Virus record (IMG/VR): IMGVR_UViG_3300042887_005053
Coordinates: 62,001-126,000 of that record
Direction: 5' to 3' (one strand)
DNA length: 64,000 nt
The notes beneath the pieces were generated by a model. The model did no database searches. It saw only the letters and a list, made by a program, of their open reading frames with translations, and was not told the origin of the DNA. Below, in pieces: positions 255 through 57,847 of this stretch. A program made the translations under genes and the position numbers. Numbering within the stretch: the stretch's first letter is position 1; each line of letters begins with the position of its first letter.

Positions 255-285
255 CTTTTATTATAAATATAATTTTTATTAAAGT

Positions 286-3030
286 TTAATATTCGTTCTC
301 AAAGATAATTCTTTCACCAGTTGATTTCATCTCTGGTCCTAATTCGATTTCAACTCCGAACTTATGTGTTGAGAATACTGGTTCTTTAAGTGCCCATCCT
401 TTTAGTTTAGATTCTGGAAATATAAAATCCTTTAATTTCAAGTCTCCAAGAATTACCTGAGTCGCTATTTTAATATAAGGTATTTCATTTGCCTTCGAAA
501 TAAATGGAACTGTTCGAGAAGAACGAGGGTTCGCCTCTATTACCCATAGATTATTTTCCTTTACAACAAATTGTATATTAATAAGACCTTTAATTCCTAA
601 ACTAATACTAATCAGTTTAGACCATTCTTTAATTCTATTTAGTATTGTATTATCTAAGTTTTTGGTCGGAAGATAAGAGTATGAATCACCAGAATGAACT
701 CCTGCTCTGTCAACATGTTCCATTATTCCAATAATATGTATATCATCTCCATCACAAATTAAATCAACTTCAGCTTCGATAGCATTTTCTATAAACTGAT
801 CAATAATAATCGTATTATTAGGAAAAAATTCAATCAACTCTTCACATTGTGTGAGTAATTCTTCTTGTGTATTTATGATTTTCATTCTTTGTCCACCAAT
901 TACATAAGACGGTCTTATCAAGACCGGAAATTCAAAGTTAATATTATTGATTTCCTCAATTTTATTTATGACATGATACTTAGGATAAAGTATGTTGTGT
1001 TTATCTAATATCGAATAGAACCTATCTCTATCTTCTGCCATATCAATACCTTCAAAAGAAGTTCCAAGTATATTAACACCTAACTTATCTAATTCACCTG
1101 CTAGTTTCAGTGCAGTCTGTCCACCTAATTGAACTACAACACCGTATGGTTTTTCAAGTCTAACTATGTCTAAAACATGTTCAAGCGTAACTGGCTCAAA
1201 GTATAACTTGTCTGGTAGATTAAAGTCAGTAGATACTGTTTCTGGATTATTGTTAATCATAATTGTTTCCCAACCTGATTCTTTAGCTGAAAGAACTCCA
1301 TGTACACATGCATAATCAAATTCAATACCTTGACCAATTCTGTTTGGTCCAGATCCTAAGAATATTACTTTCTTTTTATTGTTTGTAGAGTGACTTTCAT
1401 TTTGTGAAGTTAATGAAGAAATAGGTCTCTCAAAGGTTGAATAGTAGTAAGGCGTTTGTGCTTTGAATTCAGCTGAACAAGTGTCAATACTTTTATAAAT
1501 TCTGTTGATTTTCCAACTTTGTCTCATAGAATAAATATCCACTTCTGATACACCAGTTATTTTAGAAATTTGTTCATCACTAAATCCGTTTTGTTTAGCA
1601 ACAAGTAGTGACTCTTTATTAATTTTTCTTTTTAATTCAATTTCAATTTTACAAATAAGCTCAATTTGTTCTAACAACCACATATCTATACCAGTAACCT
1701 TTTGTATTGATTCAAGTGAAATACCTTTTTCAATTGCTGATTTTACTTGATAAATTCTCTTTGGTGTTGGGTTAGATAATTCTTCTAAGTTTTTAAAGTC
1801 TATCGAAATTAGTCCACATTTTGATTCTTCAAGACCTTGGATGGCTTTTTGAAGAGCTTCGGTGAGTGATCTACCAATAGCCATTGACTCACCAACACTT
1901 CTCATTTGAAGACCTAATGTTGAATTGGATTTAGGAAATTTCTCAAAATTCCACTTTGGTACTTTTACAACTACATAGTCTAAACTTGGTTCAAACATTG
2001 CTGATTTACCAACAATTGGATTTGATATTTCATCTAAATTATAACCAATAGCTAATTTAGCAGATATTCTTGCGATTGTATAACCAGTTGCTTTTGAGGC
2101 AAGTGCTGATGATCTTGATACTCTTGGATTTACTTCAACTGCAATAATTTCTTCTGATTGAGGTTCAACTGCGAACTGAACATTACATCCACCTGCGAAT
2201 TTACCTAAATTTCTCATCATCATAATTGACATGTCTCTCATTCTTTGAAAGGTAGTATCAGAAAGAGTCATTGCCGGAGCTATTGTAATTGAGTCACCAG
2301 TGTGAACACCCATTGGATCAAAGTTCTCAATAGTGCAGACAATAGTAACATTATCATTATTATCTTTAAGTAGTTCAAGTTCATATTCTTTCCAACCAAG
2401 AACTGCTTTTTCTACTAATACCTGAGATGTTGGAGAAGCGTCTAATCCTTTTGTAACAACTGATTCAAATTCTGATTCAGTTTTAGCAAAACCACCACCA
2501 AATCCACCCAAGGTGAAACTTGGTCTAACTACAAGTGGAAATCCTAATTTCTTAGAAGCTATAGTGGCCTCTTCTAATGTGTTTACCGCAATCGATTCTG
2601 AGATTCCGATATTTAATCTTTTCATAAACTTTCTGAATTCATCTCTGTTCTCAGTGAGTTCAATTGTATTAAGATCAACTCCGATTATTTTACAATCGTA
2701 TTTCTCCCAGATTCCGAGTTCGTCACAATCTTTACATAGATTAAGTGCTGTTTGACCACCCATAGTTGGTAGAACAGAATCTATGTTATGTGTTTCTAGT
2801 ATTTTGATTATACTATCAGGAGTTAGAGGCCACATATAAACTTTATCAGCAGTTTGTGGATCTGTCATAATAGTTGCGGGATTGTCATTAATAAGAATGA
2901 CTTCGATGCCCTCTTCTTTAAGAGATTTTGAAGCTTGAGTTCCTGAGTAATCAAATTCACAAGCTTGGCCGATTACGATAGGTCCGGATCCGATAATTAA
3001 TACTGAGCTGATAGAGTTGTTTCTTGGCAT
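286..3030 (-). CDS. carB: Carbamoyl-phosphate synthase large subunit (lacks C-terminal MGS/allosteric domain)
   Basis: IGSGPIVIGQACEFDYSG, GVHTGDS, EVNPRVSRSSALASKATG, GSGPNRIGQGIEFDY; ends shortly after LGPEMKSTGE. Confidence 0.97.
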   Translation of the reverse strand: MPRNNSISSVLIIGSGPIVIGQACEFDYSGTQASKSLKEEGIEVILINDNPATIMTDPQTADKVYMWPLTPDSIIKILETHNIDSVLPTMGGQTALNLCKDCDELGIWEKYDCKIIGVDLNTIELTENRDEFRKFMKRLNIGISESIAVNTLEEATIASKKLGFPLVVRPSFTLGGFGGGFAKTESEFESVVTKGLDASPTSQVLVEKAVLGWKEYELELLKDNNDNVTIVCTIENFDPMGVHTGDSITIAPAMTLSDTTFQRMRDMSIMMMRNLGKFAGGCNVQFAVEPQSEEIIAVEVNPRVSRSSALASKATGYTIARISAKLAIGYNLDEISNPIVGKSAMFEPSLDYVVVKVPKWNFEKFPKSNSTLGLQMRSVGESMAIGRSLTEALQKAIQGLEESKCGLISIDFKNLEELSNPTPKRIYQVKSAIEKGISLESIQKVTGIDMWLLEQIELICKIEIELKRKINKESLLVAKQNGFSDEQISKITGVSEVDIYSMRQSWKINRIYKSIDTCSAEFKAQTPYYYSTFERPISSLTSQNESHSTNNKKKVIFLGSGPNRIGQGIEFDYACVHGVLSAKESGWETIMINNNPETVSTDFNLPDKLYFEPVTLEHVLDIVRLEKPYGVVVQLGGQTALKLAGELDKLGVNILGTSFEGIDMAEDRDRFYSILDKHNILYPKYHVINKIEEINNINFEFPVLIRPSYVIGGQRMKIINTQEELLTQCEELIEFFPNNTIIIDQFIENAIEAEVDLICDGDDIHIIGIMEHVDRAGVHSGDSYSYLPTKNLDNTILNRIKEWSKLISISLGIKGLINIQFVVKENNLWVIEANPRSSRTVPFISKANEIPYIKIATQVILGDLKLKDFIFPESKLKGWALKEPVFSTHKFGVEIELGPEMKSTGERIIFENEY

Positions 3031-4097
3031 AATTTAATTTCTTTAATAAATTTTTCAAATAGATATTTTGAATCGTTTGGACCTGGTCCTGCTTCTGGAT
3101 GATATTGAACTGAAAATACTGGTAGGTTTTTCATTTTAATACCCATAACAGTTTGATCATTTAAGTGTTCGTGTGTTATTTCTAAATTTGGATTATTTAG
3201 TATCTGTTCTCTAACGAGACAGAATCCATGATTTTGTGAGGTTATTTCACACTTACCGGTTTCTAAGTTCTTAACTGGATGATTACAACCACGATGTCCA
3301 TAGAACATCTTATAAGTATCTATGTTGTTGACTATACCAATTAATTGATGACCCATACAGATTCCGAAAACTGGCTTTTTAAGATTAATTATCTTTTTAA
3401 TAAGCTGAACCATCTCAGGCATTGCTTGTGGATCACCTGGACCATTAGATATAAAAAAACCATCAACTTTATAAGATTTGATGGTTTCGAAATCCGTTGT
3501 TGACGGAAAAATAACTAAGTTGGTATCGAACTGAAGTAAATTCTTTATAATAGATGATTTGATACCTAAATCAATAATACCAATTTTATTCTTACCAGTT
3601 CCAATTTCTTGTATTTTACTACTTGTTACTTTACTGTGAAGATTTTGACCAGTCATTTTAGGATGTTCAGATAATCTTTTTTTCAATTCAGATAATTCTA
3701 ATATCTCAGATGAAATAATACAGTTTTGAGCACCAAACTCTCTAACATGATTTACAAGTGCTCTAGTATCTATATCACTTATACCAACCGTATCTTCTAA
3801 ATATTTTTGTAGAGATGTCGCGTTGTTTCTAGAATAGTTTTGTGAGAAGTTTCGACAGATTACACCAGAAACTTGAACTTTGTCAGACTCAATATCATCT
3901 GAATTTGATCCATAATTCCCAAGATGTGAATTAGTGAGAATTACGATTTGGCCAAAATAAGATGGATCTGAAAAAATTTCTTGATAACCGGTCATTCCGG
4001 TATTGAAACAAATTTCACCAAGTGTGGTGCCGATTTTCCCGAAAGACTTTCCTTCAAAAACACTTCCGTCTTCAAGAAGTAGTATGCATTTAGGCAT
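2997..4097 (-). CDS. carA: Carbamoyl-phosphate synthase small subunit
   Basis: FNTGMTGYQE, SNGPGDP, FGICMGHQ (catalytic Cys), SVQYHPE. Confidence 0.97.
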   Translation of the reverse strand: MPKCILLLEDGSVFEGKSFGKIGTTLGEICFNTGMTGYQEIFSDPSYFGQIVILTNSHLGNYGSNSDDIESDKVQVSGVICRNFSQNYSRNNATSLQKYLEDTVGISDIDTRALVNHVREFGAQNCIISSEILELSELKKRLSEHPKMTGQNLHSKVTSSKIQEIGTGKNKIGIIDLGIKSSIIKNLLQFDTNLVIFPSTTDFETIKSYKVDGFFISNGPGDPQAMPEMVQLIKKIINLKKPVFGICMGHQLIGIVNNIDTYKMFYGHRGCNHPVKNLETGKCEITSQNHGFCLVREQILNNPNLEITHEHLNDQTVMGIKMKNLPVFSVQYHPEAGPGPNDSKYLFEKFIKEIKLCQETTLSAQY

Positions 4098-4159
4098 AGT
4101 TTATTGATTTCTTTCTTTTAGATTAAAATGATTGAAATGTTTAATTAAATTAAAAAAAA

Positions 4160-4723: not shown

Positions 4724-4775
4724 ATTTTATATATTATTTTTTGAAACTGAAATAATATCTTTTGATATATAACTT

Positions 4776-5399
4776 GTGGAGAGCTTAAGAAATCTTGAAG
4801 TCAACAGATTAATCAAAGAATTAGACTTTATTAAATCGGATTATAATTATCGGTCAGAACTAATTCAATCAATAGATAAAGAATTTATAAATTCAGTTGA
4901 AAATTTTCTAAATACACATCAAAGTCTTAAAGATATTTTTGATGAGAAAACTAAAAAAAATACTGAACATCAAAACATTGAACAAGTTCAAGAGTCAAAC
5001 TATTTTGATGAAGGCCAAGATGAGATGGTTGAGGTTATAGATGATACAATAGTTGAAATAGATGAAAATGCCAAACTTAAACAATTATATAGATTAATAG
5101 CAAAGTCTACACATCCAGATAGAATTAAAGATACTAATCTCAAAGAATTGTATGTTGAGGCAACAATGGCATATGATGAAAATAATATACTACCAATTTT
5201 AAGTATTTGTAATAAGCTACAAATTCCTTATGAAATATCAGAAGACGAAATAGCTTTAGTTAAAGAAGAAATTGAATTAACAAAGAAGAGAATAAAATTT
5301 CTAGAAAGTACATTCACTTGGGAGTGGTATAGAAACGAAGACATCAAGATTAAAGACCAGGTAATATTAAACTATATAAAACAACAGATATCTAAATAG
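4776..5399 (+). CDS. J-domain-containing (DnaJ-like) protein
   Basis: LKQLYRLIAKSTHPD: helix II plus HPD motif, followed by AYDE. Confidence 0.7.
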   Translation: MESLRNLEVNRLIKELDFIKSDYNYRSELIQSIDKEFINSVENFLNTHQSLKDIFDEKTKKNTEHQNIEQVQESNYFDEGQDEMVEVIDDTIVEIDENAKLKQLYRLIAKSTHPDRIKDTNLKELYVEATMAYDENNILPILSICNKLQIPYEISEDEIALVKEEIELTKKRIKFLESTFTWEWYRNEDIKIKDQVILNYIKQQISK

Positions 5400-6554: not shown

Positions 6555-6619
6555 ATTGTGTATATATAAATAACTGATCTAATAATTTAATATATATATT
6601 AAAATTGTCTAAAAATTAA

Positions 6620-8035: not shown

Positions 8036-8037
8036 CT

Positions 8038-8358: not shown

Positions 8359-8369
8359 AAGACTAGTCA

Positions 8370-8378: not shown

Positions 8379-8382
8379 ATTT

Positions 8383-20382: not shown

Positions 20383-20516
20383 AATATAAATATTTTTTTA
20401 TGACTTATATATTTTCATTTTAAAACAAAAAAGAATTCGCTATCTAAATTTTAGAAAATAAACCAACTTTTATTTTAAAAAAGTATATAAAGTCAAAATT
20501 TAATAAATTTATAATA

Positions 20517-20922: not shown

Positions 20923-20972
20923 TGTATAAACATTTTGTGTAAGTCTATATATAAATAAAAAAATTAAAAAAA

Positions 20973-26620: not shown

Positions 26621-26625
26621 AGATA

Positions 26626-26656
26626 CAAAGATAGTAAAATTATCTTGATTACCAAA
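26626..26656 (-). promoter_or_regulatory. Bacteroidota primary-sigma promoter (-33/-7)
   Basis: Minus strand TTTG (26656-26653), 19 nt, TATCTTTG (26633-26626), 5 nt before the ATG at 26620. Confidence 0.75.
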
Positions 26657-26691
26657 ATCAAATTAATAATACATTTTTAATATATAGAACT

Positions 26692-28080: not shown

Positions 28081-28105
28081 TTGTTTACAAATTAATATAT
28101 AAGTT

Positions 28106-37230: not shown

Positions 37231-38787
37231 ATGTCAAAAGAAGCATTAAGAAAACATATTTACATAGGAGTTGTTGAAGACAACAAAGATCCAAAAAAAT
37301 TAGGTAGATGTAGAGTTCGAGTATTTAATATATTCGATGATATACCGGTTGAAGACATTCCTTGGGCGTCACCTTGGAAAGACTTAAATGGAAATGGATT
37401 TACTGTTCCAGAAAAAGGAAAAGTCCTATCAGTTGTTTTTGATGAAGGCAATAAATATAAACCAGAGTATATCTGTGCAGAACATTATAATGTTAATTTA
37501 GAAAAGAAGTTAGAGTCTTTGGGTGAATCTGATTACCTATCAATGAGAACTTTATTATTTGATCATAAAACACAAATATATTCAAACGATAATGAAGGTC
37601 TTAAAATAGACTACAAGTTTAACAATATCAACATAACCGATACTAATATTGATGTAAATCTAAAAGATAATTTTGGAACATTGAATTTAGGAACATCTAC
37701 TGCTAATCAACAAGCAATTTTAGGTAATCACTTTCTGGATTGGTTTGATGAATTTTTAGATAATTTACTTGGATCAAGAGGAGGACCATATCTTGGTAAT
37801 TTGGGAGCACCAGTAGTTGCAAATCCTGATTTGATTCAGTGTATTTCTAAATACAAAGCTTTGAAAGATCCTAAATTTCTTTCACATCATGTTAATATCG
37901 TGGACAACGAGTATGTTAATAAATTAGATAGAGTTTGTGATCCACAATTGGGTGACACTTGGAAATCAACTGTTAAAGAAAATGAAACTGTTGTCAAAGA
38001 AAGGCCAGCATTCCTTCCACAAAGTGGTAATTCAACTGATACTCCTGAGGGTGACTTGACTACTTCTGTTGACGAAAAAGGCGTAGTAGAAAATGCAGTA
38101 AAAACAGAAGAACCACCAAAAGTTGAAGTAACTGTAAATCCAGATTTGAATAATATTCTGAAAGCGATGGAAAAGAAAAAATACAAGATTTTGACTAGAC
38201 CTTTCGAAGCAAATATTGTCGGAATTAGAAGACAATATGAAGGACAGAAATATTCAAATGCTTTCAAAGATGATTTGTTTTTATTTTTCAAGGATACTAG
38301 TGGTAATTGGCAAACTTACAAATTTAAGATTTCGACTATGCCTGGCTTCTATAATGGAGTCGACGTCCTAAAAGACGGTAAGTGGAAATTTAAAAAAGAT
38401 AAAAACTCTAAATTAAATGTAAAACAATCACAAATGATGTTAGGTCGTGGTGGTATGGGTATTTTAATGGAGGCTCAGTATATTAATTTGTATACGATCG
38501 GTGATTATCACAGCGCTCCAGCAATGAAAACACTTGGTGCACAAAAATTTTATAGAGACACTAATCCAACTGATACTATTACTTATACTAAAAAAGGTGA
38601 AGGTACAGCAGCGATGTATATACATTTAGGATATAATGGTGGTAGAACTGTAGATAACTGGAGTGAAGGCTGTCAGGTATTCTCACAGAAGTCTGAACAT
38701 TTGAAGTTTTTTGACCTTTGTCAAGAACATAAGAACAGATACGGAAATAAGTTCAACTACACGCTAATGTTAGAGAGAGACTTATAA
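37231..38787 (+). CDS. gp5-like baseplate spike (N-terminal OB fold) with C-terminal His/Cys L,D-transpeptidase-like domain
   Basis: YIGVVEDNKDPKKLGRCRVRV..IPWA; C-terminal IH-x10-WSEGCQV. Confidence 0.75.
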   Translation: MSKEALRKHIYIGVVEDNKDPKKLGRCRVRVFNIFDDIPVEDIPWASPWKDLNGNGFTVPEKGKVLSVVFDEGNKYKPEYICAEHYNVNLEKKLESLGESDYLSMRTLLFDHKTQIYSNDNEGLKIDYKFNNINITDTNIDVNLKDNFGTLNLGTSTANQQAILGNHFLDWFDEFLDNLLGSRGGPYLGNLGAPVVANPDLIQCISKYKALKDPKFLSHHVNIVDNEYVNKLDRVCDPQLGDTWKSTVKENETVVKERPAFLPQSGNSTDTPEGDLTTSVDEKGVVENAVKTEEPPKVEVTVNPDLNNILKAMEKKKYKILTRPFEANIVGIRRQYEGQKYSNAFKDDLFLFFKDTSGNWQTYKFKISTMPGFYNGVDVLKDGKWKFKKDKNSKLNVKQSQMMLGRGGMGILMEAQYINLYTIGDYHSAPAMKTLGAQKFYRDTNPTDTITYTKKGEGTAAMYIHLGYNGGRTVDNWSEGCQVFSQKSEHLKFFDLCQEHKNRYGNKFNYTLMLERDL

Positions 38788-40419
38788 ATTCATCTTTATA
38801 ACTTTATAAGGGTATTTTCTCTTCTTGTAGAACTTCTCTCTTTCTAAGAAATGTTTATATAAAATATTGTTCATTTCTTTAGGATCAAACACATCAACAA
38901 TATCGAATATTGTAGCTATTTTCTTTTGATCGTGTTTTCTGAGAGCTCTACCAATAGACTGTATAATTATTTGTTCTGATTTGAATGAGTCTGCAAAAAT
39001 TACATTAAATATAGCATTTATTGAGACACCTGTACTTAATGTGCCATAGCTCGCCACTAGAACCTTGACATTACCATCAGTCTTCTCCATTTCTTTTTTT
39101 ATAAACTCTCTTTGTTTGTTGTTGACTTCTCCGTCAATATAATAAAAGTCTTTATTGGAGATTTCTTGTTTAAGTTTTTCAAATATTTTAGTACCATATT
39201 CAATTGTGTGAAATAGTAATAGAGTGTTTGAATCACACTTATCTACTAGTTTCTTAATAAACTCTAATCTTTTATCTGAGTTCTGTATAAATTCTTTTTC
39301 ATATCTAAAAGCATCAGCACCAGCTCCCATTTTTCTTATATAATTAAGCCTTTCATTTATTTCACCAGTTGAATGATTCAATACCACAGCTTTAATGTTC
39401 ATAGGAGTAATTGTACCAGAATCAACTAAGGTCGAGGCTTCAATTTGAGTAACTTTCGGACCAAGAACTGATTGTATAGTAAGTATTTCCAGGGTCTCAT
39501 CATTTGGAAATGTTCCTGAAACTCCAAATCTATTATAGGCATGTTTGAAAGTTCTTTTCAGTATTTGTGTTAAAGTTGTAGCTTTTGCACCGTGTGCTTC
39601 GTCACAGGCGACTGTGTGAAATTGTTGAAAGAATTCTTTAGGCCATTTTTCAAGTGATTGATAACATCCAACATAAATATTTGGTTGAGAAGGTCCAGTA
39701 TACTTTCTAGGTCTATCTGACATTATCTCTTCAAGTTTAATATGACAAGGATTATAGTTTGGATTTTCGTCTAAAATAGGTTCAATCATATGATCTCTGA
39801 ACTCTACTTTATCGCCATATTTAGCTAGGTAATTAAATCCATAATTATATTCCATGATGTTCTCATAAAACTGAGTAACAAGTGTTATTGAAGGAACTAT
39901 TATTAAGAATTTTGCATTTTCGTCCATGTTTCTTAATACATAAAACATTACAATTGAAATGACTAAAGATTTACCACCAGAAGTAGCTACTTCGGCCATA
40001 CAATATCTATTTTTTAGAATTTTATAAGCAGTTTCAATTTGATAATCATAAGGCATAAATGGTATCCACTCACCAGTCTTTTTATCTTTCATTTTGTGAT
40101 CTTTGAAGAATTCTTTACAAAAATTTGTAACTGATTCTAAAGTAACCTCTCTGTTTAATGGAAACTCATCACGGTTTTCGATATTAAATGTAACTCCAAT
40201 TTCTTTACAAGCTTTATAACACTCTCGCCAAAGACCAAGATTAACTTTACCGTTATCAAAGTAAGATTGTTGTCCATTCCATACACCCATTTTAAAAGCA
40301 GGCATAAATCTATATCCCTTAACATGTCGAGTAAGCCAAATATTGATTTGGTGATATTCTACACGAGTTGCTGAAGAGACAACTAATTTTTCGTCATTTG
40401 AATCGTACCGAAAATTCAT
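38782..40419 (-). CDS. uvsW: UvsW-like SF2 helicase
   Basis: PYDYQ, ATSGGKS, DEAH, SGT, STGVSI, QSIGRALR; N-terminal GYRFMPAFKMGVWNG. Confidence 0.85.
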   Translation of the reverse strand: MNFRYDSNDEKLVVSSATRVEYHQINIWLTRHVKGYRFMPAFKMGVWNGQQSYFDNGKVNLGLWRECYKACKEIGVTFNIENRDEFPLNREVTLESVTNFCKEFFKDHKMKDKKTGEWIPFMPYDYQIETAYKILKNRYCMAEVATSGGKSLVISIVMFYVLRNMDENAKFLIIVPSITLVTQFYENIMEYNYGFNYLAKYGDKVEFRDHMIEPILDENPNYNPCHIKLEEIMSDRPRKYTGPSQPNIYVGCYQSLEKWPKEFFQQFHTVACDEAHGAKATTLTQILKRTFKHAYNRFGVSGTFPNDETLEILTIQSVLGPKVTQIEASTLVDSGTITPMNIKAVVLNHSTGEINERLNYIRKMGAGADAFRYEKEFIQNSDKRLEFIKKLVDKCDSNTLLLFHTIEYGTKIFEKLKQEISNKDFYYIDGEVNNKQREFIKKEMEKTDGNVKVLVASYGTLSTGVSINAIFNVIFADSFKSEQIIIQSIGRALRKHDQKKIATIFDIVDVFDPKEMNNILYKHFLEREKFYKKRKYPYKVIKMNL

Positions 40420-40421
40420 AT

Positions 40422-40451
40422 TATTTATATGTATTAAAATAATCTATGTTT
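40422..40451 (-). promoter_or_regulatory. Putative early/middle promoter AAAC-N18-TATAAATA (representative)
   Basis: Same fixed spacing upstream of gmk, carA, J-domain, AAA, uvsW, clpP, clamp and uvsY genes. Confidence 0.65.
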
Positions 40452-41596: not shown

Positions 41597-41696
41597 AATT
41601 TAATTTATTTTGATTTCTACTATTTTTTATTGATAAAGTTTGATTTAAAAAAGAGATTTCCAGATTTAATATATAATAAAAAATATTTGTAAAATT

Positions 41697-44626: not shown

Positions 44627-44884
44627 TTAATAAGATGAATCATAGTCTTCATATGAAGAAGAATCGTCTTCGTCTCGATACTCAAATGATCTTTCATCAT
44701 CGAGTAAAAGTATATTGGAATCATCTAAAATATGATCAATATCAATTTTGATTTCAAGATTTGATTCTTCTGCTTTTTCTAAAAGAGAAAGAATTTTTTT
44801 CTTTGCTTCATCTTTGGTGAGTAGATATTCTCTTTTTCTGGTGAGAACTTTTGATAATTCTTTGTAAAAATCAACTATTGTCAT
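44627..44884 (-). CDS. Small protein with acidic S/Y tail
   Basis: ORF track; stop/start overlap with neighbour. Confidence 0.5.
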   Translation of the reverse strand: MTIVDFYKELSKVLTRKREYLLTKDEAKKKILSLLEKAEESNLEIKIDIDHILDDSNILLLDDERSFEYRDEDDSSSYEDYDSSY

Positions 44885-45114
44885 TATTTTGTAATTTGGT
44901 TAATCGTATATTGTCTAAATTCATTTTTATCAATAAATCTGATATGAGAATACGAATAGATCTCTCCTTCATCATTCCTAATATCGAGATCAATGTAATC
45001 ATCATAATCATTTACATGTTCAATTGTATATTCTTTACCAACAGTTAGAGTGGCTCTACTGTTGATAATACAAATAACTGACTGTCCTTCTGTGAACTTA
45101 ACTTTATTTACCAT
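44884..45114 (-). CDS. Small SH3-like hypothetical protein
   Basis: GQSVICI..LTVGKEYTI..NDEG..Y. Confidence 0.55.
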   Translation of the reverse strand: MVNKVKFTEGQSVICIINSRATLTVGKEYTIEHVNDYDDYIDLDIRNDEGEIYSYSHIRFIDKNEFRQYTINQITK

Positions 45115-45115: not shown

Positions 45116-46228
45116 TTACAAATATAATGAATTTTTTTGAAAAAAATTAGATAAAATTTCTGAAATTTTATCTTTATTCTTATAAGATATTCTAAGTAGA
45201 TGAATGTTATTATTTATACAATAGTTATTTTTTATCTCATCGTTTCTTTTAATTCTCTCGAGAGTGTTCTCACCTCCAAATAATACGCAAGGCTTAAAAT
45301 GTAGTTCTCCATCAAATTCAATGCAAAGATTTAGTTTTTGAATATAAAAGTCAAAAGGTAGCTTGTTTATATTTTTACAATCTATGAATTTCTTTTCAGT
45401 TTCAAACTCTATATTTTTTTCTTCTAGAAATCTTTTGATCAATTTCTCACCAATTGACTTTTTATTACCATCGCTGGTAAGATAATTTAAGTAGCCGGAC
45501 CAATTACTACGATAAACATATTCTGGTCTTTTTGGTAAAAAGGTAATATTATTTTTTTTGATATAGTTGAGGTATTCAAATCTATCAATCAAATTTAATT
45601 CTTTAAGTAGTTTCACTGCTGATTTATAATCTAAAAATTGTTTAGATTTTGTAAGAGGTGACATTTGAGAATCCAAAAATGTTTCCCAGTTAATCCATTT
45701 GCCATCTTTCTTGTAAACATGATCTGGTCTTTTAGGAATATTGATTGGTAGTATGTTTCTATCTAATAATAACCATTGTTTTCTATTTTTGATATTAAAA
45801 TTTTGTTTTATAAATAGTTTACAATCATCATATCTTAAATAATTGATATTTGTCAAATTTTTAAAGCTATTTAGGCCTAGCCAATCAGCAAGTGATACCC
45901 ATTCTTTGTAAACAGAGCTTGGATTTGAAGGTATTTTTATACTTCCTTTATTTACACACCACTTACACCAATCTTTTTGATTTTTCAATTTCAGTGTTCT
46001 TACATAGTCTCTAGCTTCACGGAATTCTAAATATTTACTTTTACCATCACTAGATAAGAAATCGGTCCACGAAATCCATTCATGTTTTCTTTTGTAAAAT
46101 TCATATGGTCTTTTATTTACTTTCTCATCAAAACTTCCTTTCTTAGCTAATATATAAAATTGGTAAGATGATAATATATCAAAATCCTTTAGATACTCTT
46201 TGCATTCTTCATATGAAAAATATTTCAT
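45116..46228 (-). CDS. Putative free-standing homing endonuclease: tandem helical repeats plus C-terminal PD-(D/E)xK (Vsr/DUF559-like) domain
   Basis: Four repeats of IPxxPxxVY..W.SW.DFL type; LPFDFYI...IEFDGELH; start reassigned to the ATG at 46228, just downstream of TAATATATA. Confidence 0.7.
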   Translation of the reverse strand: MKYFSYEECKEYLKDFDILSSYQFYILAKKGSFDEKVNKRPYEFYKRKHEWISWTDFLSSDGKSKYLEFREARDYVRTLKLKNQKDWCKWCVNKGSIKIPSNPSSVYKEWVSLADWLGLNSFKNLTNINYLRYDDCKLFIKQNFNIKNRKQWLLLDRNILPINIPKRPDHVYKKDGKWINWETFLDSQMSPLTKSKQFLDYKSAVKLLKELNLIDRFEYLNYIKKNNITFLPKRPEYVYRSNWSGYLNYLTSDGNKKSIGEKLIKRFLEEKNIEFETEKKFIDCKNINKLPFDFYIQKLNLCIEFDGELHFKPCVLFGGENTLERIKRNDEIKNNYCINNNIHLLRISYKNKDKISEILSNFFQKNSLYL

Positions 46229-48173: not shown

Positions 48174-48233
48174 TATGGATTAACATCCAAATTTTTTCTA
48201 CTTCCATATTTTATATATATCTAAAAATAACTT

Positions 48234-48542
48234 TTGTTTATGTTATCAAATATTTCGAAATTTTCATGGGCTGAAATGTTTTCCAACGACAACGGTAAAA
48301 CATCAGCAACTGCTTTTAGTGGATGGCTTATTTGTGTTATTGGTTCTATCTGTTTTTTACTTGGGTGTATAGATAAAATGTGGCTTTCACATTCAGTAGA
48401 CATCATCACTCAATCAATTGTATTTGTTACTATTGGCGCAGCTTTACTTGGCATCAGAAAAGTCGCAACTAATAAAACTACTTCAACTCCTACACAAGAA
48501 ACTCTTACACAAGAACCTCCTATTGAACAGATCAACTCTTAA
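48234..48542 (+). CDS. Two-TM membrane protein (holin-like size and topology)
   Basis: Two hydrophobic helices, NGKTS motif; true start may be the ATG at 48240. Confidence 0.5.
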   Translation: MFMLSNISKFSWAEMFSNDNGKTSATAFSGWLICVIGSICFLLGCIDKMWLSHSVDIITQSIVFVTIGAALLGIRKVATNKTTSTPTQETLTQEPPIEQINS

Positions 48543-49014: not shown

Positions 49015-49048
49015 AGAACTTTAATTGATTTTTTATTATATATTAATT

Positions 49049-49513
49049 TTATCCAACGGTTTTTTCATCTTCTATCGTATTTACGACATATTCTAAAAAA
49101 TTGTCCAACTCATATTCTAAACCGTTACAATACTCTAATATATCATATCCTTCTCTTTCAAAATAAGGAATCAATTGTTCACCGACCTTCAAAATATAAC
49201 CTTCTAATTCACCACTAAGTCTCTTATTATTTCCAAATTCTAAGTCTGGTACTGTTATAGTTCCATAATAGTATTTTTCTTCACCGAAATCTTCTATACT
49301 CTTTAATTTAAAAGTAAAATACTTATCAGTAAATGTTTGTTGTTTCATTAAAGTCAAAATTCTATTCATCTCAACTTTATTATCCCAAGCTTTCAAGAAA
49401 TCTTTTTCTAAATTATCCAACGAGTCAAAACCAGACCTATTAATCTTATCTAAGATCTCATCCAAAACCTCATTATAAAAGGTCCAATTCTCATATGTTT
49501 TTAGATATAACAT
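49049..49513 (-). CDS. Hypothetical protein
   Basis: Leader MLYLKTYE; LDEILDKI..SGFDSL..EK.FL helix motif. Confidence 0.6.
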   Translation of the reverse strand: MLYLKTYENWTFYNEVLDEILDKINRSGFDSLDNLEKDFLKAWDNKVEMNRILTLMKQQTFTDKYFTFKLKSIEDFGEEKYYYGTITVPDLEFGNNKRLSGELEGYILKVGEQLIPYFEREGYDILEYCNGLEYELDNFLEYVVNTIEDEKTVG

Positions 49514-49548
49514 TATAAATCATAGTCGTTTGGATTATATATACAAAA

Positions 49549-49851: not shown

Positions 49852-49869
49852 CAGTTAAAACATATAATT

Positions 49870-50724: not shown

Positions 50725-50735
50725 GATGGTATATA

Positions 50736-51973
50736 TTAAAACCCACCACTAAAAATGTCCATTATAACAGTAAGCCTTTTAGATATTTCCGGCAGTCCAA
50801 GAGGCGCAATAATCGAATTAATTGGACTCAATATACACTTTTCAAATTGAGTATCTAAGTCAATCTCAGGTGCCATCTCAATAGGATATGATCCTCTAAT
50901 GTAAGCAAAAGTATCATTCATTGATTTATCTTTGACATAGTAATACTTGATCTTAGTTCCAGATTTGATAAACTCATACTTAGATTGTAAAGATTTATTT
51001 CTATGTAGTAAGAAGTTATAATAAGCAGAAGCTTTAACAGCAAAGTGAGCTCCACTAACAAACTCTAATTTGTCCTTATCATTCAAACACTTATCATCAT
51101 AATTTGAACAAGAAGATTGCATACAGATCTCATCTATTCGATCTGGTACACACAAGTCAAACTCTTTTCTTAAATTCTTTACTAACTTTAGTAACTCCTT
51201 AATGTTAAATGTATCTGGGTGTTCAAACAAATATTTAACAATACCAACAATCTTATCTCTTGCAAAAAGAGGAGTAGATGATCTCACAAGTTCAACTCCC
51301 TTAGGATACATATAAGTCAATCTATCATAAGGAATTCCATCTTCATAAACAATATGTTGAATATACTTCTTTTTAGCAATGTTTATAATTGATTCAGAAA
51401 TACGCTCTAACTCAAAATCTTGTTTGTTTTCAACACCATACTCAGCAGCATGTTCATCTAAACATTTTTTGAAATATCCAGCATATCTATTCTTATCTAA
51501 TGCATGAATAAACTCTAATTCTGTTTTGTATGCATGTTTCCATTCACAATGATCCATCGCTGGCTTAAATGATACAAAAAGTGAATCAGTATCAGCATAT
51601 ATAGAAACTTGCTCATCTCTTTCAATTGGAGTAACATTTTTGAGATTCATTTTTTCATGCAACTCAGTATCTAAATGCCATTGATTATACCAATAGTCTT
51701 CATTTACTTTATGCATTGTTTGCGTCAGGTTTCTACCTTCAGCTGTTATGGTTCCAGCAACATGGTTATTAAATAAAATAAAATAGGGTGTTGCGAATGC
51801 ACCGTAACTACCATTTAACACTAACTTCAAAGCTTTTTTTCACCCCCTCTGAAAATAATCAGAGGGGGTTATCTAGCGAGCTGAAGAGCGTTGAAATAAT
51901 CAACTTCCTTCTTCAGCTCGTTTGCTTGTTTTTTTAGTGACTCGATCTTTTCTAATCTTTCTTCTCTAGTCAT
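50736..51973 (-). CDS. Family-B DNA polymerase C-terminal subunit (gp43B-like), in two segments: 51973-51875 and 51830-50736
   Basis: Joined product reads ...YFNALQLA|LKLVLNGSYG (motif B), then IT.EGR, YADTDS, KKKY, KGVE; no exonuclease domain or motif A. Confidence 0.85.
51831..51877 (-). other. Candidate programmed translational bypass element (44-nt gap)
   Basis: GCT(51877-75) AGA TAA, 11-bp perfect stem (51869-59/51852-42), G-A7, GCT(51833-31). Confidence 0.7.
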
Positions 51974-52041
51974 TAATTTTTATTTTTTGTAAATTTGTTC
52001 TAAACAGAACTAATGGTATTTAATATATTAACTTAAATAAC

Positions 52042-53061
52042 ATGACTTATATGTTTAAAGAAGAAGAAGTTTTAGTTAAGATCAATGCTCGTAATGTCAA
52101 TTACTATAAAGAAAAAGGATATGATGTATCTATATCTGGGTTCACTGACTCAAAAGATTTTTTAGTAAAAACATTGGATATACCCAAAGGTTCACATTTG
52201 AAAATAATCGCAATCTGTGAATTGTGTCAGTGTGAAAAAAATATATCGATTGAGAAATATTATACAAATAAAGAAAGAAATAATAAAGGATATTATTCAT
52301 GTTTTAGTTGTAAGACAGTAGAAAAAGAAAAAACTTGCTTGAATAAGTATGGTGTAAAATCATACTCACAAACAAGTGAGTTCAAAGAGTCTGAAAGTAA
52401 AAAGTGGAAAGGAATACAGAAAGGTTCAGAAAAAGGTAAAAAAACTAATTTAGAAAGATATGGATTTGAATCTTTTTTTCAAACAGAAAAGATGAGAGAA
52501 ATGAATAGAAGTTGGATGTCATCTGATGAGTTTAGATCAAAATCAAAACAAACAATATTAGAAAAATATGGAGTTGATAGTTTTTCAAAAACATCCAATT
52601 TTAGAAACATAATTAATGAAAACAAAGAACAGATAGTAGAAAAAATAAAACAAGTTTTTTTGGACAAGTATGGTGTTAATTGGCCATCTAAAGTAAAAGA
52701 TATTGTCGATAAGTCCTTAAAAACTAGAGAGGAAAATGGTGATATCATACCACCTGAAAATTTAAGTGATTTTCAAAAATACCGAAAATTAGTTAGGAAA
52801 ATTACCAATAGAAATAAGAAAAAACTTTTTGAGGACTGGCTTGGATTTGACTATTATGATAACGAGTTTATTAAAGGTAATTTTTCACTATCATCATCAC
52901 ACAGACTATATCCAACAATTGATCATAAAATATCGATACATTACGGATTTACAAATAAAATATCAGCCTCTGAGATAGGCCATTTAGACAATTTATGTAT
53001 AACAAAAAGAAGAATTAACTCAACGAAGAGACAGTTAATAGAAGAAGTATTTAACTCATAG
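52042..53061 (+). CDS. Putative free-standing homing endonuclease (Zn-ribbon, KYGV repeats, C-terminal HNH-like domain)
   Basis: CELC..CFSC; four (K/R)YG(V/F) repeats; PTIDHKISI...NLCIT...N.TK. Confidence 0.75.
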   Translation: MTYMFKEEEVLVKINARNVNYYKEKGYDVSISGFTDSKDFLVKTLDIPKGSHLKIIAICELCQCEKNISIEKYYTNKERNNKGYYSCFSCKTVEKEKTCLNKYGVKSYSQTSEFKESESKKWKGIQKGSEKGKKTNLERYGFESFFQTEKMREMNRSWMSSDEFRSKSKQTILEKYGVDSFSKTSNFRNIINENKEQIVEKIKQVFLDKYGVNWPSKVKDIVDKSLKTREENGDIIPPENLSDFQKYRKLVRKITNRNKKKLFEDWLGFDYYDNEFIKGNFSLSSSHRLYPTIDHKISIHYGFTNKISASEIGHLDNLCITKRRINSTKRQLIEEVFNS

Positions 53062-53078
53062 TTCTACTTAGTAGATGA

Positions 53079-54401
53079 TTAAATACCAGTATAATTAGTT
53101 GGACTCATACTTTTTAATTCTTTTTTTATGAGTTCTGGTATTTCTAATTGGTCGATAAATTGGTTGATTACTTCTTGGTCTATTTCTTTTCCTCTAGCAA
53201 GTTCTTTAAGTTTTTCGTAGGGTTCTTGTACTTTTTCTCTTCTTAAAACAGTTTGGATTCCTTCGGTTACAACAGACCAATTATTTTCTAAATCTTCTGT
53301 TATTACTTCTTCATTTAATACAAGTTTATCTATTCCTTTTTTAATTGAGTCTATACTTATTGTAATGTGCGCAATTGGAACCCCGATATTTCTGAGTACA
53401 GTTGAATCTGTTAAATCTCTTTGTAGTCTTGAGATTGGTAGTTTTTCTGATAGATGAGTTAGTATAGCATTTGCCATTCCTAAATTTCCTTCTGCATTTT
53501 CGAAGTCGATTGGATTTACTTTGTGTGGCATTGCTGAAGAACCGGTTTCATTTGGATTCGTTTTTTGATTGAAATAGTTCATAGAAATGTATTGCCAAAT
53601 ATCTCTACAAAAATCAATTAGAATTACATTGATTCTTCTTAGGTTGTCGAACAAAACAGCAAGTGAATCATAATGATCAATTTGAGTAGTATATTGAGAC
53701 CTTTTTAATCCCATTTTTTGAGTGAAAATATTTGCAAATTCTTTCCAATCGATTTGTGGATAAGCTACATGATGGGCATTAAAGTTACCTGTTGCTCCGC
53801 CAAATTTACAAGAAAGTTCTATTTTATGTAAACTAAGAATTTGATTATCTAATCTTTCAACAAATACCATTAATTCTTTGTCCATTTTGGTTGGAGAAGC
53901 AGGTTGACCGTGTGTATGAGCAAGCATTGGTGTGTCTTTACAATTATCTGACAAAGACTTAATCTTATTATTTAGTTCGGTTATATCTTTGATATAAGTA
54001 TTTAGCCAATTAAGAAGTTGTAAAGGAATTGCTGTGTTATTAATATCTTGTGATGTTAGACCAAAATGAACAAACTCTTTGAATTCAGATAGGTTAAGTT
54101 TTTCTAATTTTGTTTTGATAAAATACTCGACTGCTTTTACATCGTGATTGGTCTTTTTTTCGATTTCTTTTATCTCATTAGCATCGGCTTCACTAAAGTC
54201 ATAGTAAATACTCATAAGATCATTAGCATTAGGTATGTTAAGATTTATGGCATTATTTAGTTCAATTAAATATTTGACTTCAACATATACTCTATATTTA
54301 ATAAGAGCGAATTCCGAAAAGAATTCTGATAGTTTTTGAGTTTTGTTGTGATATCTACCATCAATTGGACTTACTGAGGTTAAGGGTGTTAATTTATTCA
54401 T
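53079..54401 (-). CDS. purB: Adenylosuccinate lyase
   Basis: SPIDGRY, TNHDVKAVEY, HFGLTSQD, GSSAMPHKVNPIDFEN; start probably the ATG at 54401. Confidence 0.95.
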   Translation of the reverse strand: MNKLTPLTSVSPIDGRYHNKTQKLSEFFSEFALIKYRVYVEVKYLIELNNAINLNIPNANDLMSIYYDFSEADANEIKEIEKKTNHDVKAVEYFIKTKLEKLNLSEFKEFVHFGLTSQDINNTAIPLQLLNWLNTYIKDITELNNKIKSLSDNCKDTPMLAHTHGQPASPTKMDKELMVFVERLDNQILSLHKIELSCKFGGATGNFNAHHVAYPQIDWKEFANIFTQKMGLKRSQYTTQIDHYDSLAVLFDNLRRINVILIDFCRDIWQYISMNYFNQKTNPNETGSSAMPHKVNPIDFENAEGNLGMANAILTHLSEKLPISRLQRDLTDSTVLRNIGVPIAHITISIDSIKKGIDKLVLNEEVITEDLENNWSVVTEGIQTVLRREKVQEPYEKLKELARGKEIDQEVINQFIDQLEIPELIKKELKSMSPTNYTGI

Positions 54402-55179
54402 CGTCTGCGGTAAAGTCTTGTTCAAAGCTGAGCATCAAATTTGAGTTTTCGTCTTTGACTAAAATAAAGGTTTCGAAAATACTGAAATAAATGTTGTCAT
54501 TTTGATCATTAATATTTGATAAATATTTTTTACCAAAAATTAATTGTGTGTTTTTAGCATCAACTTCATCAACTATAAGTTCCCATTTTGATAGTTCATT
54601 CATAGTTACTTTATTATCAGTTACATTAATATTAACAATTCTTTCTTCGTTGTTAATACCACAAAGTTTCTTAACATCTGCGAAATCTTCTTTAGAAATT
54701 TTGAATGACCACTTTGATAATTTTGGATTTAGTCTTGTTTCTAAAAATTGTGGATTTAGATCACGGATTTTGTGTTGTTCTCCACCAACAATAGTGATTT
54801 TCAGTTTGTTATTTGTAAACTGTGCTGCTCTAACATGCATAGTATCTTCTGAGTCTGGACTTGGTTTGAATACTAAATCTAGTTTAATAGTCGAGTTAGT
54901 GTTAAATAAAGCTAAGTTCTTAGCAAATTTTGTAGCAGAAGTGATGATTAAATCGAAAGTAGTATCTTGTTTGAAACCTTCAATATAGTCATCTGTCTTC
55001 AAGAGATAAGTTTTAAGTGCTAAAACACTAACATCGTTAGATATCATTGAATAGAGTAGAATATTAGAACTTGTGATTTTAATTTTAACACAGTCTTCAA
55101 TATTAGTGAGGTCTTTGAATTTTTGTAGAAAGTCACTAAAGTTATTTTGATTAAATTTTAATGCTAATTTATTTGCCAT
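54394..55179 (-). CDS. Putative DNA sliding clamp (gp45/PCNA-like)
   Basis: About 260 aa with twofold repeated alpha/beta pattern; close to the polymerase gene; no diagnostic motif. Confidence 0.45.
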   Translation of the reverse strand: MANKLALKFNQNNFSDFLQKFKDLTNIEDCVKIKITSSNILLYSMISNDVSVLALKTYLLKTDDYIEGFKQDTTFDLIITSATKFAKNLALFNTNSTIKLDLVFKPSPDSEDTMHVRAAQFTNNKLKITIVGGEQHKIRDLNPQFLETRLNPKLSKWSFKISKEDFADVKKLCGINNEERIVNINVTDNKVTMNELSKWELIVDEVDAKNTQLIFGKKYLSNINDQNDNIYFSIFETFILVKDENSNLMLSFEQDFTADDE

Positions 55180-55224
55180 AAAATGTATATTAAAAAGCTG
55201 AAATGAAGTTTTTCAAAAAGATTT

Positions 55225-56756: not shown

Positions 56757-57076
56757 ATAAATTCTTTAAGTGTTTTTCTTAGTATTGATTCGATTTCTCT
56801 AGCTTTTTTTCTATTAGTTTTAATGTCTAATTGTATTCTAAAGTTTTTAATCTGAAGATCTTCTTCATCAGATACTTCAATAATCTCAATATCAATTTCT
56901 TTATCATCTATAATTTCTTGGAAATTTGAAGAAGAGATGATATCATTTATTGGAATTGTAAATTCTAATCCTTCTACACTAACTTGATGTTCTTTATCAA
57001 TTTTGATAGTTTCTCCTTTATTAAGGATTTTTTTCCCAAAGAAAACTACATCTTCTAAAACTAAAAATTCTCTCAT
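56753..57076 (-). CDS. Hypothetical protein
   Basis: 107-aa ORF in operon. Confidence 0.5.
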   Translation of the reverse strand: MREFLVLEDVVFFGKKILNKGETIKIDKEHQVSVEGLEFTIPINDIISSSNFQEIIDDKEIDIEIIEVSDEEDLQIKNFRIQLDIKTNRKKAREIESILRKTLKEFI

Positions 57077-57078
57077 AA

Positions 57079-57570
57079 TTATCTTCCTAAATAGTTCATT
57101 AATTCTATAATATTTTTAATTGTATATCCTAAACTTTCTAAGTTTTTGGATGAGCTTCTTAAAAATTCAATATAGTTTTCTATTAATTGTATATTTCTGT
57201 CATTTTCAGAAATGTGTGCATCAATTAGTAGTCCTTTTTCACCAAGATTGGTTTTAAGTCCAAATCCGGTTGCATAGAAAACAAACTTATCTTGTTTTAG
57301 TTTTTTAATTTTTACTTCTTCTTTTGATCTCTTATTTAAGAAGAAAGAAATTTGTTCATTTATGACTTGTCGATAGCTAAGTGCTAAAGATTGAACTTCC
57401 ATAATTTTTTGAGAGTTTTCTAAAGTAAAGTTATTTTTAATCACATCAAATAATGGCGTAATATTTTTACTCCATTCTTCTCTCTTTTGATTAAAAAAGT
57501 CTTCTAGTTTATCATTTGTTTCTTTTGCTTTTTCGATTCTGATTCTTTCTTCGTCTGTATAGAGATTCAT
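57079..57570 (-). CDS. UvsY-like recombination mediator
   Basis: All-helical protein, ..FY.., C-terminal IEFL...LGYTIKNIIEL resembling the UvsY end. Confidence 0.55.
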   Translation of the reverse strand: MNLYTDEERIRIEKAKETNDKLEDFFNQKREEWSKNITPLFDVIKNNFTLENSQKIMEVQSLALSYRQVINEQISFFLNKRSKEEVKIKKLKQDKFVFYATGFGLKTNLGEKGLLIDAHISENDRNIQLIENYIEFLRSSSKNLESLGYTIKNIIELMNYLGR

Positions 57571-57586
57571 ATTAAAAATTAAATAT

Positions 57587-57847
57587 TTGTATTTATATAT
57601 ACCAGAAATAATCTTGTTTAAGAGAATGGATATTAAATTTGAAATCGAAAAGGCTCAAAAAATTGAAATTCTCAATGATAATGATTTACAAAGTGTAAAA
57701 GAATTATACTTTTCTAAGGATGGTATTTTACCAAAAATTTATAATTTTGCTACTACGAAAAAAGGAGAAGAGTCTTCACTTATTTTATCGGATTTAAATA
57801 AAATCAGAAGTATAATTACCAAAAAAATAAGTGATTATACTAGCTAA
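57587..57847 (+). CDS. Hypothetical protein
   Basis: ORF track; true start may be the internal MDIKFE. Confidence 0.4.
   Translation: MYLYIPEIILFKRMDIKFEIEKAQKIEILNDNDLQSVKELYFSKDGILPKIYNFATTKKGEESSLILSDLNKIRSIITKKISDYTS

What the first reader, a model, noticed from the sequence alone, without database searches (positions are those of the whole stretch)
261..57619. Second promoter class AAAC-N18-TATA upstream of replication and metabolism genes
Seen with fixed 18-nt spacing at 261-287(-, gmk), 4116-4142(-, carA, TAAAA), 4744-4771(+), 20464-20491(+, CAAC), 20928-20957(+), 40422-40451(-, uvsW), 41613-41641(-, clpP, TAGAAAT), 52002-52029(+, HNH), 55185-55211(-, clamp) and 57590-57619(-, uvsY). 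It does not match the Bacteroidota sigma consensus. Inference: recognised by a phage-encoded sigma factor or activator driving a middle programme.
Basis: partly seen in the sequence, partly recalled or inferred. Interest (0 to 1): 0.6.

Follow-up and report, generated by a model that had tools for sequence, protein, structure and literature searches.

The report
Phage middle promoters read by ECF sigma
The AAAC-N17/18-TATA motif is a real promoter class, conserved in a lineage of huge freshwater phages of Bacteroidota, that sits in front of DNA-replication genes and the late sigma gene and is most likely read by a phage-encoded ECF-type sigma factor.

Summary
AAAC-N18-TATA occurs 17 times in the window against 7.6 expected. 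In a blind scan of all 4-mers and gaps, AAAC at gap 18 is the strongest signal (22 gene-proximal sites in the 204-kb contig against 3.6). The three degenerate ones (carA, CAAC, clpP) have no statistical support, and two exact sites were missed.

The contig has three promoter types:
- a host Bacteroidota type, TTTG/TAnnTTTG;
- this class B;
- an abundant class A, tTTAATATATA with no -35 element, found before portal, tail-tube and (in relatives) major-capsid genes.

Class B precedes topoisomerase II, helicase, clamp/DNA polymerase, clamp loader, exonuclease, UvsY-like, gmk, MazG and homing-endonuclease genes.

Class B is conserved in related IMG/VR phages while its spacers diverge. It lies before topo II in 25 of 41 loci and before the gp55-like late sigma gene in 47 of 52. 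All five near-complete relatives encode an ECF-type sigma, and that gene is itself preceded by class B in 14 of 16 loci, which looks like autoregulation.

Inferred cascade: host sigma, then phage ECF sigma, then class B, then gp55-like sigma, then class A. The ECF gene is not on this incomplete contig, and no RNA data exist.

The parts
262..287 (-). Class B promoter-like site, exact AAAC-N18-TATAAT, 8 nt before the start of the guanylate kinase gene
   Evidence: Guanylate kinase is phrog_1815. The motif is conserved at the G002 orthologue.
4744..4769 (+). Class B site, exact, 7 nt before ORF 4776-5399 (207 aa, unknown function)
   Evidence: Its TATATA also resembles class A. It is not conserved at the G002 orthologue.
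20928..20953 (+). Class B site, exact, with TATATAAATA at the -10 position, 20 nt before ORF 20973-22052 (359 aa, unknown function)
   Evidence: Conserved at the G002 orthologue.
40426..40451 (-). Class B site, exact, 7 nt before the UvsW-like helicase gene 38782-40419
   Evidence: Helicase is phrog_16 at 2e-71. Conserved at the G002 orthologue with an N17 gap.
48214..48239 (-).
   Evidence: HNH PHROGs.
49037..49062 (-).
   Evidence: no protein family found.
52002..52027 (+). Class B site, exact, 15 nt before the homing endonuclease gene 52042-53061, which lies between the two halves of the DNA polymerase gene
   Evidence: phrog_12131/3339.
55186..55211 (-). Class B site, exact, 7 nt before the sliding-clamp-like gene 54394-55179, which is followed by the N-terminal DNA polymerase ORF 53079-54425
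   Evidence: PCNA/gp45-like fold in the ESM Atlas, TM about 0.7. There is no sequence-level match to T4 gp45.
57594..57619 (-). Class B site, exact, with TATATAAATA at the -10 position, 24 nt before the UvsY-like gene 57079-57570
   Evidence: The UvsY match is weak (phrog_231, E = 4e-4). The G002 orthologue has TAAC-N18-TATA.
4116..4142 (-).
   Evidence: AAAC-N18-TAAA is not enriched (42 against 41.5 background).
20464..20491 (+).
   Evidence: CAAC-N18-TATA is only marginally enriched (11-12 against 6.8 +/- 2.3).
41613..41641 (-).
   Evidence: AAAC-N18-TAGA gives 18 against 12.9 +/- 3.7. The protease's best matches are head-maturation protease PHROGs.
26624..26633 (-). Context: host-type -7 element TATCTTTGTA (class E) 4 nt before ORF 25727-26620
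45117..45126 (-). Context: host-type -7 element TATATTTGTA (class E) 3 nt before ORF 44884-45114
28095..28101 (+). Context: one example of class A (ATTAATATATA, no -35 element), 5 nt before ORF 28106-29563. About 30 more such sites lie in the window.

Best explanation
AAAC-N17/18-TATAwa is the middle (delayed-early) promoter class of a T4-core huge phage of a freshwater Bacteroidota host. Its extended consensus in the clade is wAAACAAA, a T-rich spacer, then aTATAta.

Inferred mechanism:
1. Host sigma-A RNA polymerase first transcribes early genes from host-type TTTG/TAnnTTTG promoters. These early genes include a phage gene for a roughly 200-aa ECF-type (group 4) sigma factor.
2. That sigma binds host core polymerase. 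Its region 4 reads AAAC at -35 and its region 2 reads TATAwa at -10.
3. It amplifies its own gene and switches on the topoisomerase, helicase, clamp/polymerase, clamp-loader, nuclease, recombination-mediator, nucleotide-metabolism and homing-endonuclease genes, as well as the gene for the gp55-like minimal sigma.
4. The gp55-like sigma then reads the class A promoters (tTTAATATATA, no -35 element) of structural genes.

Shown: the motif is real, its position before genes is specific, it is conserved across the clade, and it is associated with the gene classes named above. The sigma genes exist in relatives.

Inferred: which sigma reads which class, the timing, and that this phage's unsequenced part carries the ECF sigma gene.
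For: Statistics: this contig; G002; other relatives; pooled AAAC-N18-TATA before ORFs is 111 against 24 +/- 4.7, and AAAA, AAAT and AAAG are not enriched at N18.

Downstream genes: topo II large and small subunits, exonuclease, MazG, clamp loader and HNH; helicase, gmk, HNH and UvsY-like; a PCNA-like clamp followed by the DNA polymerase N-terminal part. A DNA or nucleotide-metabolism PHROG is found for 11 of 22 class B genes against 1 of 20 class-A-only genes (P = 0.0017).

Phylogenetic footprint: 25 of 41 topo II loci carry the motif. Class B is shared at G000/G002 orthologues with odds ratio 30, P = 1e-5. In the promoters of the gp55-like gene, information content sits only in AAAC, aTATAaC and the first transcribed bases, while the spacers are about 42% identical.

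Sigma factor: an ORF with Sigma70_r2 plus r4_2 above the Pfam cut-offs is present in 5 of 5 relatives that are 91-98% complete. It scores 83 bits against the ECF superfamily model. The closest solved structure is B. subtilis SigW, E = 2e-15.

Autoregulation: AAAC-N17/18-TATAAt lies 60-130 nt before the sigma gene in 14 of 16 loci, and some loci also have a host-type TAnnTTTG element further upstream. ECF sigmas often regulate their own promoter and use 16-18-bp spacers (PMC7776599).

Cascade: the gp55-like gene (phrog_234) has class B directly after a terminator hairpin in 47 of 52 loci. The major capsid, portal and tail-tube genes have class A.

No AsiA or MotA homologues were found.
Against: - There are no transcript data; only DNA runs from lake water hold this phage.
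- The ECF sigma gene is not on this contig. Its presence in this phage is extrapolated from relatives whose topo II is 57-78% identical.
- The -10 part (TATAta) is nearly the same as the core of class A, so both classes could share one sigma.
- Known ECF -10 elements (own knowledge, for example CGTA for SigW) look different from TATA.
- Class B is conserved at only 8 of 19 comparable G000/G002 orthologue pairs.
- My gene starts come from a crude in-house gene caller.
- Counts across relatives are not independent events.
Confidence: 0.62

Rival explanations
1. Class B is read by the same gp55-like minimal sigma as class A. AAAC would then be the site of a separate phage activator or -35-binding co-factor (a gp33-like or sigma-region-4-like protein) that makes these promoters fire earlier or independently of replication.
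For: The two classes share a TATATA core and the same two preferred distances to the ATG. Nine genes carry both motifs. A small ORF with a weak sigma r4_2-like helix-turn-helix exists at contig 160269-160553 (E = 0.07). Group 2 jumbo phages are reported to carry gp33 orthologues (PMC7824862).
Against: The gp55-like gene itself depends on class B in 47 of 52 loci, with the motif sitting right after a terminator, so gp55 could not start its own synthesis. The ECF sigma gene carries the motif in 14 of 16 loci, which this model does not explain. The r4_2-like ORF has no PHROG or Pfam family.
Confidence: 0.15
2. Class B is read by a host factor: one of the many host ECF sigmas of Bacteroidota, or host sigma-A redirected by an unrecognised phage appropriator, as MotA/AsiA do in T4.
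For: Bacteroidota carry dozens of ECF sigmas (abstract of PMC13472631). AAAC at -35 is a generic ECF feature (own knowledge). This contig itself has no ECF sigma gene.
Against: Class B lacks the TTTG elements that the host-type promoters of this same contig carry. No AsiA or MotA homologues were found in G000 or in three near-complete relatives. A conserved phage ECF sigma with the motif in front of its own gene is the simpler reader.
Confidence: 0.12
3. The sites are not promoters. They would be chance AT-rich matches, or a signal with another role such as a translation or replication signal.
For: The genome is 30% G+C and TATA-rich. Eight of the 17 window hits lie inside genes at the chance level.
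Against: AAAC at gap 18 is the top signal of 8184 blind tests. It replicates in independent genomes. The sites are strand-specific with respect to the downstream gene. Only the two boxes are conserved, not the spacer. In the gp55 loci the motif lies directly after terminator hairpins.
Confidence: 0.04

Closest known systems
ECF (group 4) sigma promoters, e.g. B. subtilis SigW (TGAAAC-N16-CGTA, own knowledge), with positive autoregulation
   Same: A bipartite promoter with an AAC-containing -35 box and a rigid 16-18-nt spacer. The cognate sigma has regions 2 and 4 only, and the motif lies upstream of the sigma gene itself.
   Different: The sigma is encoded by a phage. The -10 box is TATAwa rather than a CGT-type element. 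No anti-sigma factor was identified. The regulon is a replication module plus a second sigma gene.
Phage T4 middle transcription (MotA box plus AsiA-remodelled sigma-70)
   Same: The role in the programme and the gene set (topoisomerase, helicase, clamp, clamp loader, nucleases, gene 55). The phage has a T4-type core: gp55-like sigma, gp23-type capsid, UvsW, UvsY, and gp44/45-like proteins.
   Different: There are no MotA or AsiA homologues. The -10 box does not resemble the host sigma-A element. The likely reader is a complete phage sigma, not an appropriated host sigma.
Sigma cascades of Bacillus phage SPO1 (gp28, then gp33/34) and the ECF-like sigma gp36 of phage phiEco32 (own knowledge; SPO1 in PMC13401047)
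   Same: Phage-encoded sigma factors replace the host sigma on host core polymerase to run the middle and late programmes.
   Different: The lineage and host phylum differ. Here an ECF-type sigma is combined with a T4-type minimal late sigma, and the promoter sequences differ.
T4 late promoters (TATAAATA, gp55 + gp33 + clamp)
   Same: An AT-rich -10 box. Three window sites even contain TATAAATA.
   Different: T4 late promoters have no -35 element. That description fits class A here (tTTAATATATA), not class B.

Membership tests
ECF-sigma-dependent promoter | Bipartite motif with an AAC-containing -35 box and a -10 box at a fixed 16-18-nt spacing | tested here: met
   AAAC at gap 17/18 from TATA. 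Sharp spacing peak. The C of AAAC is required (AAAA, AAAT and AAAG are not enriched at N18).
ECF-sigma-dependent promoter | A cognate ECF sigma gene in the same genome | tested here: inconclusive
   Not found on this contig, which is 35% complete. Present in 5 of 5 near-complete relatives. By synteny the locus lies beyond the contig end.
ECF-sigma-dependent promoter | The motif lies upstream of the sigma gene itself (autoregulation; common but not universal) | tested here: met
   14 of 16 sigma loci in relatives. Cannot be tested in this contig.
ECF-sigma-dependent promoter | A transcription start a few nt downstream of the -10 box, dependent on the sigma | not testable with these tools
   No RNA run holds the phage.
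T4-type middle promoter (MotA/AsiA) | A MotA box near -30, a host-sigma-type -10 box, and motA and asiA genes | tested here: not met
   The -10 box is unlike the host TAnnTTTG element. PF09114 and PF09010 are absent from G000 and three near-complete relatives.
T4-type late promoter (gp55) | A single extended -10 element with no -35 element, placed before structural genes | tested here: not met
   Class B has a required -35 box and precedes replication genes. Class A fits this description instead.
Host Bacteroidota sigma-A promoter | TTTG at -33 and TAnnTTTG at -7 | tested here: not met
   Class B sites lack both elements. About 13-15 separate sites in the contig do have them.

The most novel reading that the evidence does not exclude
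The gp55-like protein (sigma region 2 only) and a separate small -35-binding protein could act together as a two-piece sigma at class B promoters, with the same gp55-like protein working alone or with the clamp at class A. That would explain why both classes share the TATATA core. The conserved ECF sigma would then have another, still unknown regulon.
Probability: 0.08. Interest if true: 0.8.

Novelty: new variant of a known kind. Interest (0 to 1): 0.6.

Why it matters
Huge phages of Bacteroidota are common in lakes. This one is held by runs from 15 studies, yet the lineage is uncultured and its gene regulation is unknown. The papers I could reach list sigma genes in such phages but give no promoter analysis.

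A three-tier promoter code lets early, middle and late genes be assigned from sequence alone across hundreds of contigs. It also suggests that this T4-core lineage solved the middle-transcription problem differently from T4, with a self-amplifying ECF sigma in place of MotA/AsiA. And it yields a compact, probably orthogonal sigma/promoter pair for Bacteroidota genetics. All of this still needs transcript-level proof.

Tried and rejected
- Megablast of 8 kb of the window against GenBank phages found no match. A tblastn search found only distant relatives: huge uncultured phages, PAU, PTm1, pT24 and MA9V. Annotation transfer from them was therefore dropped.
- T4 1-50 kb was fetched for comparison. 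BLAST of the clamp-like ORF against T4 gp45 found nothing. The gp55 comparison gave only E = 0.01.
- An iterated position-weight matrix for class B drifted into generic AT-rich matches and was abandoned in favour of the explicit pattern.
- A block-shuffle null for class A was uninformative, because AATATATA is no more frequent than its composition predicts; it is only mis-distributed.
- Pfam Gp23 and gp19 searches of the contig were blank. By synteny the capsid gene lies just beyond the contig end.
- PHROG and Pfam scans left most class A genes without a family.
- The search for RNA runs found none.
- A GAGA-N15-TATA sub-motif in G000 did not replicate in G002.
- A second, RpoD-like sigma is present only in G002 and was rejected as the general reader.
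- No large protein search, structure prediction or complex prediction was needed.
Full report
**What the sequence is.** The window is bases 62001-126000 of a single 204,336-bp IMG/VR virus contig with 30% G+C. CheckV rates it about 35% complete. Near-identical DNA is held only in lake-water and freshwater metagenomes, and no RNA run holds it. The closest database phages are uncultured huge phages and PAU/PTm1-type jumbo phages of Bacteroidota. IMG/VR holds many relatives, including near-complete genomes of 344-508 kb. I called 223 genes with a simple codon-usage ORF picker, so start codons are approximate.

**Check of the observation.** All ten stretches read as described. The literal pattern AAAC-N18-TATA occurs 17 times in the window against 7.55 +/- 2.74 in shuffles, and no shuffle of 100 reaches 17. 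Nine hits lie just upstream of a same-strand start, and eight lie inside genes, which is the chance level.
- Across the contig, a spacing scan from N10 to N26 peaks at N18: 44 hits, 22 of them gene-proximal, against 1-6 gene-proximal hits at other gaps (N16 gives 11 and N17 gives 9).
- A blind scan of every 4-mer at every gap from 8 to 40 upstream of gene-proximal TATA ranks AAAC at gap 18 first of 8184 tests (22 against 3.56, P = 4e-11). AACA and AACT at gap 17 come next.
- Pooled with relatives, AAAC-N18-TATA before ORFs counts 111 against a background of 24 +/- 4.7, and N17 counts 63.
- AAAA, AAAT and AAAG are not enriched at N18, so the C of AAAC matters.
The carA, 20464 and clpP sites therefore stay unsupported.
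- Two exact sites were missed, at 48214-48239(-) and 49037-49062(-).

**Three promoter types.**
- *Class A.* De novo EM on all upstream regions finds tttaATATATA as the dominant motif. It has no conserved -35 region, lies before about 73 genes, and sits either 4-6 nt or 18-27 nt from the ATG.
- *Class E.* Intergenic regions that lack both class A and class B reveal the classical Bacteroidota promoter, TTTG-N19/20-cTTAtaTTTGTA. There are about 13-15 sites, mostly before a block of small ORFs at contig 25-46 kb. This also points to a Bacteroidota host.

**Genes behind each class.** Class B precedes:
- both topoisomerase II subunits (a divergent pair), a gp47-like exonuclease, MazG, the clamp loader and a homing endonuclease;
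- guanylate kinase, the UvsW-like helicase, a homing endonuclease and a UvsY-like protein;
- another HNH gene;
- a 261-aa protein with a PCNA/gp45-like fold, which heads an operon with the N-terminal half of a split DNA polymerase.

Class A precedes the portal and tail tube. In three relatives it precedes the gp23-type major capsid gene. Most other class A genes have no known family. A DNA or nucleotide-metabolism PHROG is found for 11 of 22 class B genes against 1 of 20 class-A-only genes (P = 0.0017).

**Conservation.**
- Forty-four IMG/VR loci encode topo II at 57-78% identity. In 25 of the 41 examined, AAAC-N18-TATA lies 6-36 nt (mostly 21-26 nt) before the ATG, although the flanks and spacers differ.
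- In 245 kb of dereplicated relatives, N18 again peaks, at 83 against about 28. The extended consensus is wAAACAAA, then a T-rich stretch, then aTATAta.
- In G002 (464.6 kb, 98% complete) the gene-proximal counts at N17 and N18 are 28 and 27, against about 8.
- Orthologous genes of G000 and G002 tend to keep their class: A/A in 21 pairs, E/E in 7, and B in both in 8. For class B the odds ratio is 30, P = 1e-5.

**Who reads class B.**
- The contig has a gp55-like minimal sigma at contig 196944-197309. It matches phrog_234 (E = 5e-7), shows a weak Sigma70_r2 hit, and shares a short similarity with T4 gp55.
- The contig has no complete sigma gene.
- All five near-complete relatives encode a 201-206-aa protein with Sigma70_r2 and r4_2 above the Pfam cut-offs. 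It scores 83 bits against the NCBIfam ECF superfamily model. The closest solved structure is B. subtilis SigW.
- By synteny, the G002 region that holds this gene (161 kb) has no counterpart in the contig, which covers G002 69-96 kb and 250-370 kb.
- In 14 of 16 loci the sigma gene is preceded by AAAC-N17/18-TATAAt, 60-130 nt upstream. Several loci also carry a host-type TAnnTTTG element further upstream.
- ECF sigmas often drive their own promoter and use 16-18-bp spacers (PMC7776599).
- The gp55-like gene has AAAC-N17/18-TATAA about 50 nt before its ATG, directly after a terminator hairpin, in 47 of 52 distinct loci. In this contig the form is GAAAC-N17-TATAAAAT.
- In those promoters, information content is confined to AAAC, aTATAaC and the first transcribed bases. 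The spacers are about 42% identical, close to random.
- AsiA and MotA families are absent from the contig and from three near-complete relatives.

**Model.** Host sigma-A starts early genes and the ECF sigma gene. The ECF sigma then amplifies itself and turns on the replication module and the gp55-like gene from class B. The gp55-like sigma finally turns on the structural genes from class A. Two asymmetries support this order:
- the ECF sigma gene often has a host-type promoter as well;
- the gp55-like gene has class B as its only evident promoter.

The assignment of sigmas to classes, the timing, and the presence of the ECF gene in this phage are all inferences.

**Rivals.**
- A shared gp55-like sigma plus a -35-binding co-factor would explain the common TATATA core, but it cannot start gp55 synthesis.
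- A host ECF sigma or a remodelled host sigma-A cannot be excluded without experiments, but neither explains the motif in front of the phage sigma gene.
- Chance is excluded by the blind scan and by replication in other genomes.

**Literature.** A comparative survey notes that T4-like group 2 jumbo phages, including the Prevotella megaphages, encode minimal and complete sigma factors and gp33 (PMC7824862). A 2025 description of large freshwater "moraphages" of Bacteroidota lists a sigma factor among the core genes (PMC12619734). I found no description of these promoter motifs in my searches. That is no proof that none exists.

**Verdict.** It is a new variant of a known kind, a phage sigma cascade. 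I rate it of moderate to good interest, pending transcript mapping.

Noticed in passing
Whole contig; in the window e.g. 26680-26686(+), 28095-28101(+), 59006-59012(-), 60848-60854(-): The class A motif tTTAATATATA, and several host-type TAnnTTTGTA elements, end only 3-6 nt before the ATG in about 30 genes. A second group ends 18-27 nt before it. If these are -10/-7 elements, many mRNAs of this phage would be leaderless or nearly so.
   Followed up: partly
window 50736-54425: The family B DNA polymerase appears to be split. An N-terminal ORF at 53079-54425(-) and a C-terminal ORF at 50736-51830(-), which matches the C-terminal part of the PHROG DNA-polymerase profiles, are separated by a homing-endonuclease gene on the opposite strand (52042-53061) that has its own class B site. 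G002 has the same layout.
   Followed up: partly
Relatives, loci L056, L097-L111, between the class B site and the ATG of the ECF sigma gene: Two or three copies of a conserved box, ACGGCAAT, lie in the leader of the sigma gene, one of them directly before the start codon. It could be an operator or a translational-repressor site.
   Followed up: no
Relatives L112-L191 and contig 196,860-196,943 (outside the window): The leader of the gp55-like gene is conserved beyond the promoter. It reads TATAACATGAAAGC at the start, then a variable hairpin, then AAAAAATAAT before the ATG. This may be a post-transcriptional control element.
   Followed up: no
contig 92079, 97460, 103675, 162859, 166331, 200454 (window 30079, 35460, 41675): A subset of class A sites has (A)GAGA 15 nt upstream of TATA (10 against 1.4 expected). 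These precede the tail-tube and portal genes and two large ORFs. The signal was not replicated in G002.
   Followed up: yes
window 286-4097: A 914-aa ORF and a 366-aa ORF with a glutamine amidotransferase domain look like a carB/carA (carbamoyl-phosphate synthase) pair carried by the phage. BLAST finds no counterpart in G002. The carB identity was not tested.
   Followed up: no
It may therefore be the prohead protease, a late function, which fits its lack of a supported class B site.
   Followed up: partly
G002 459,0xx-459,8xx (L061:1360-2088): One relative carries an extra RpoD/RpoS-like sigma (regions 1.2, 2 and 4; 242 aa) near its contig end. It was not seen in the other four near-complete relatives.
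   Followed up: partly
contig versus G002: Gene order differs. Contig 1-43 kb matches G002 69-96 kb and is joined directly to a block that matches G002 320-370 kb, and two further blocks are inverted. Two relatives are labelled 'provirus' by IMG/VR despite sizes of 476-508 kb.
   Followed up: no
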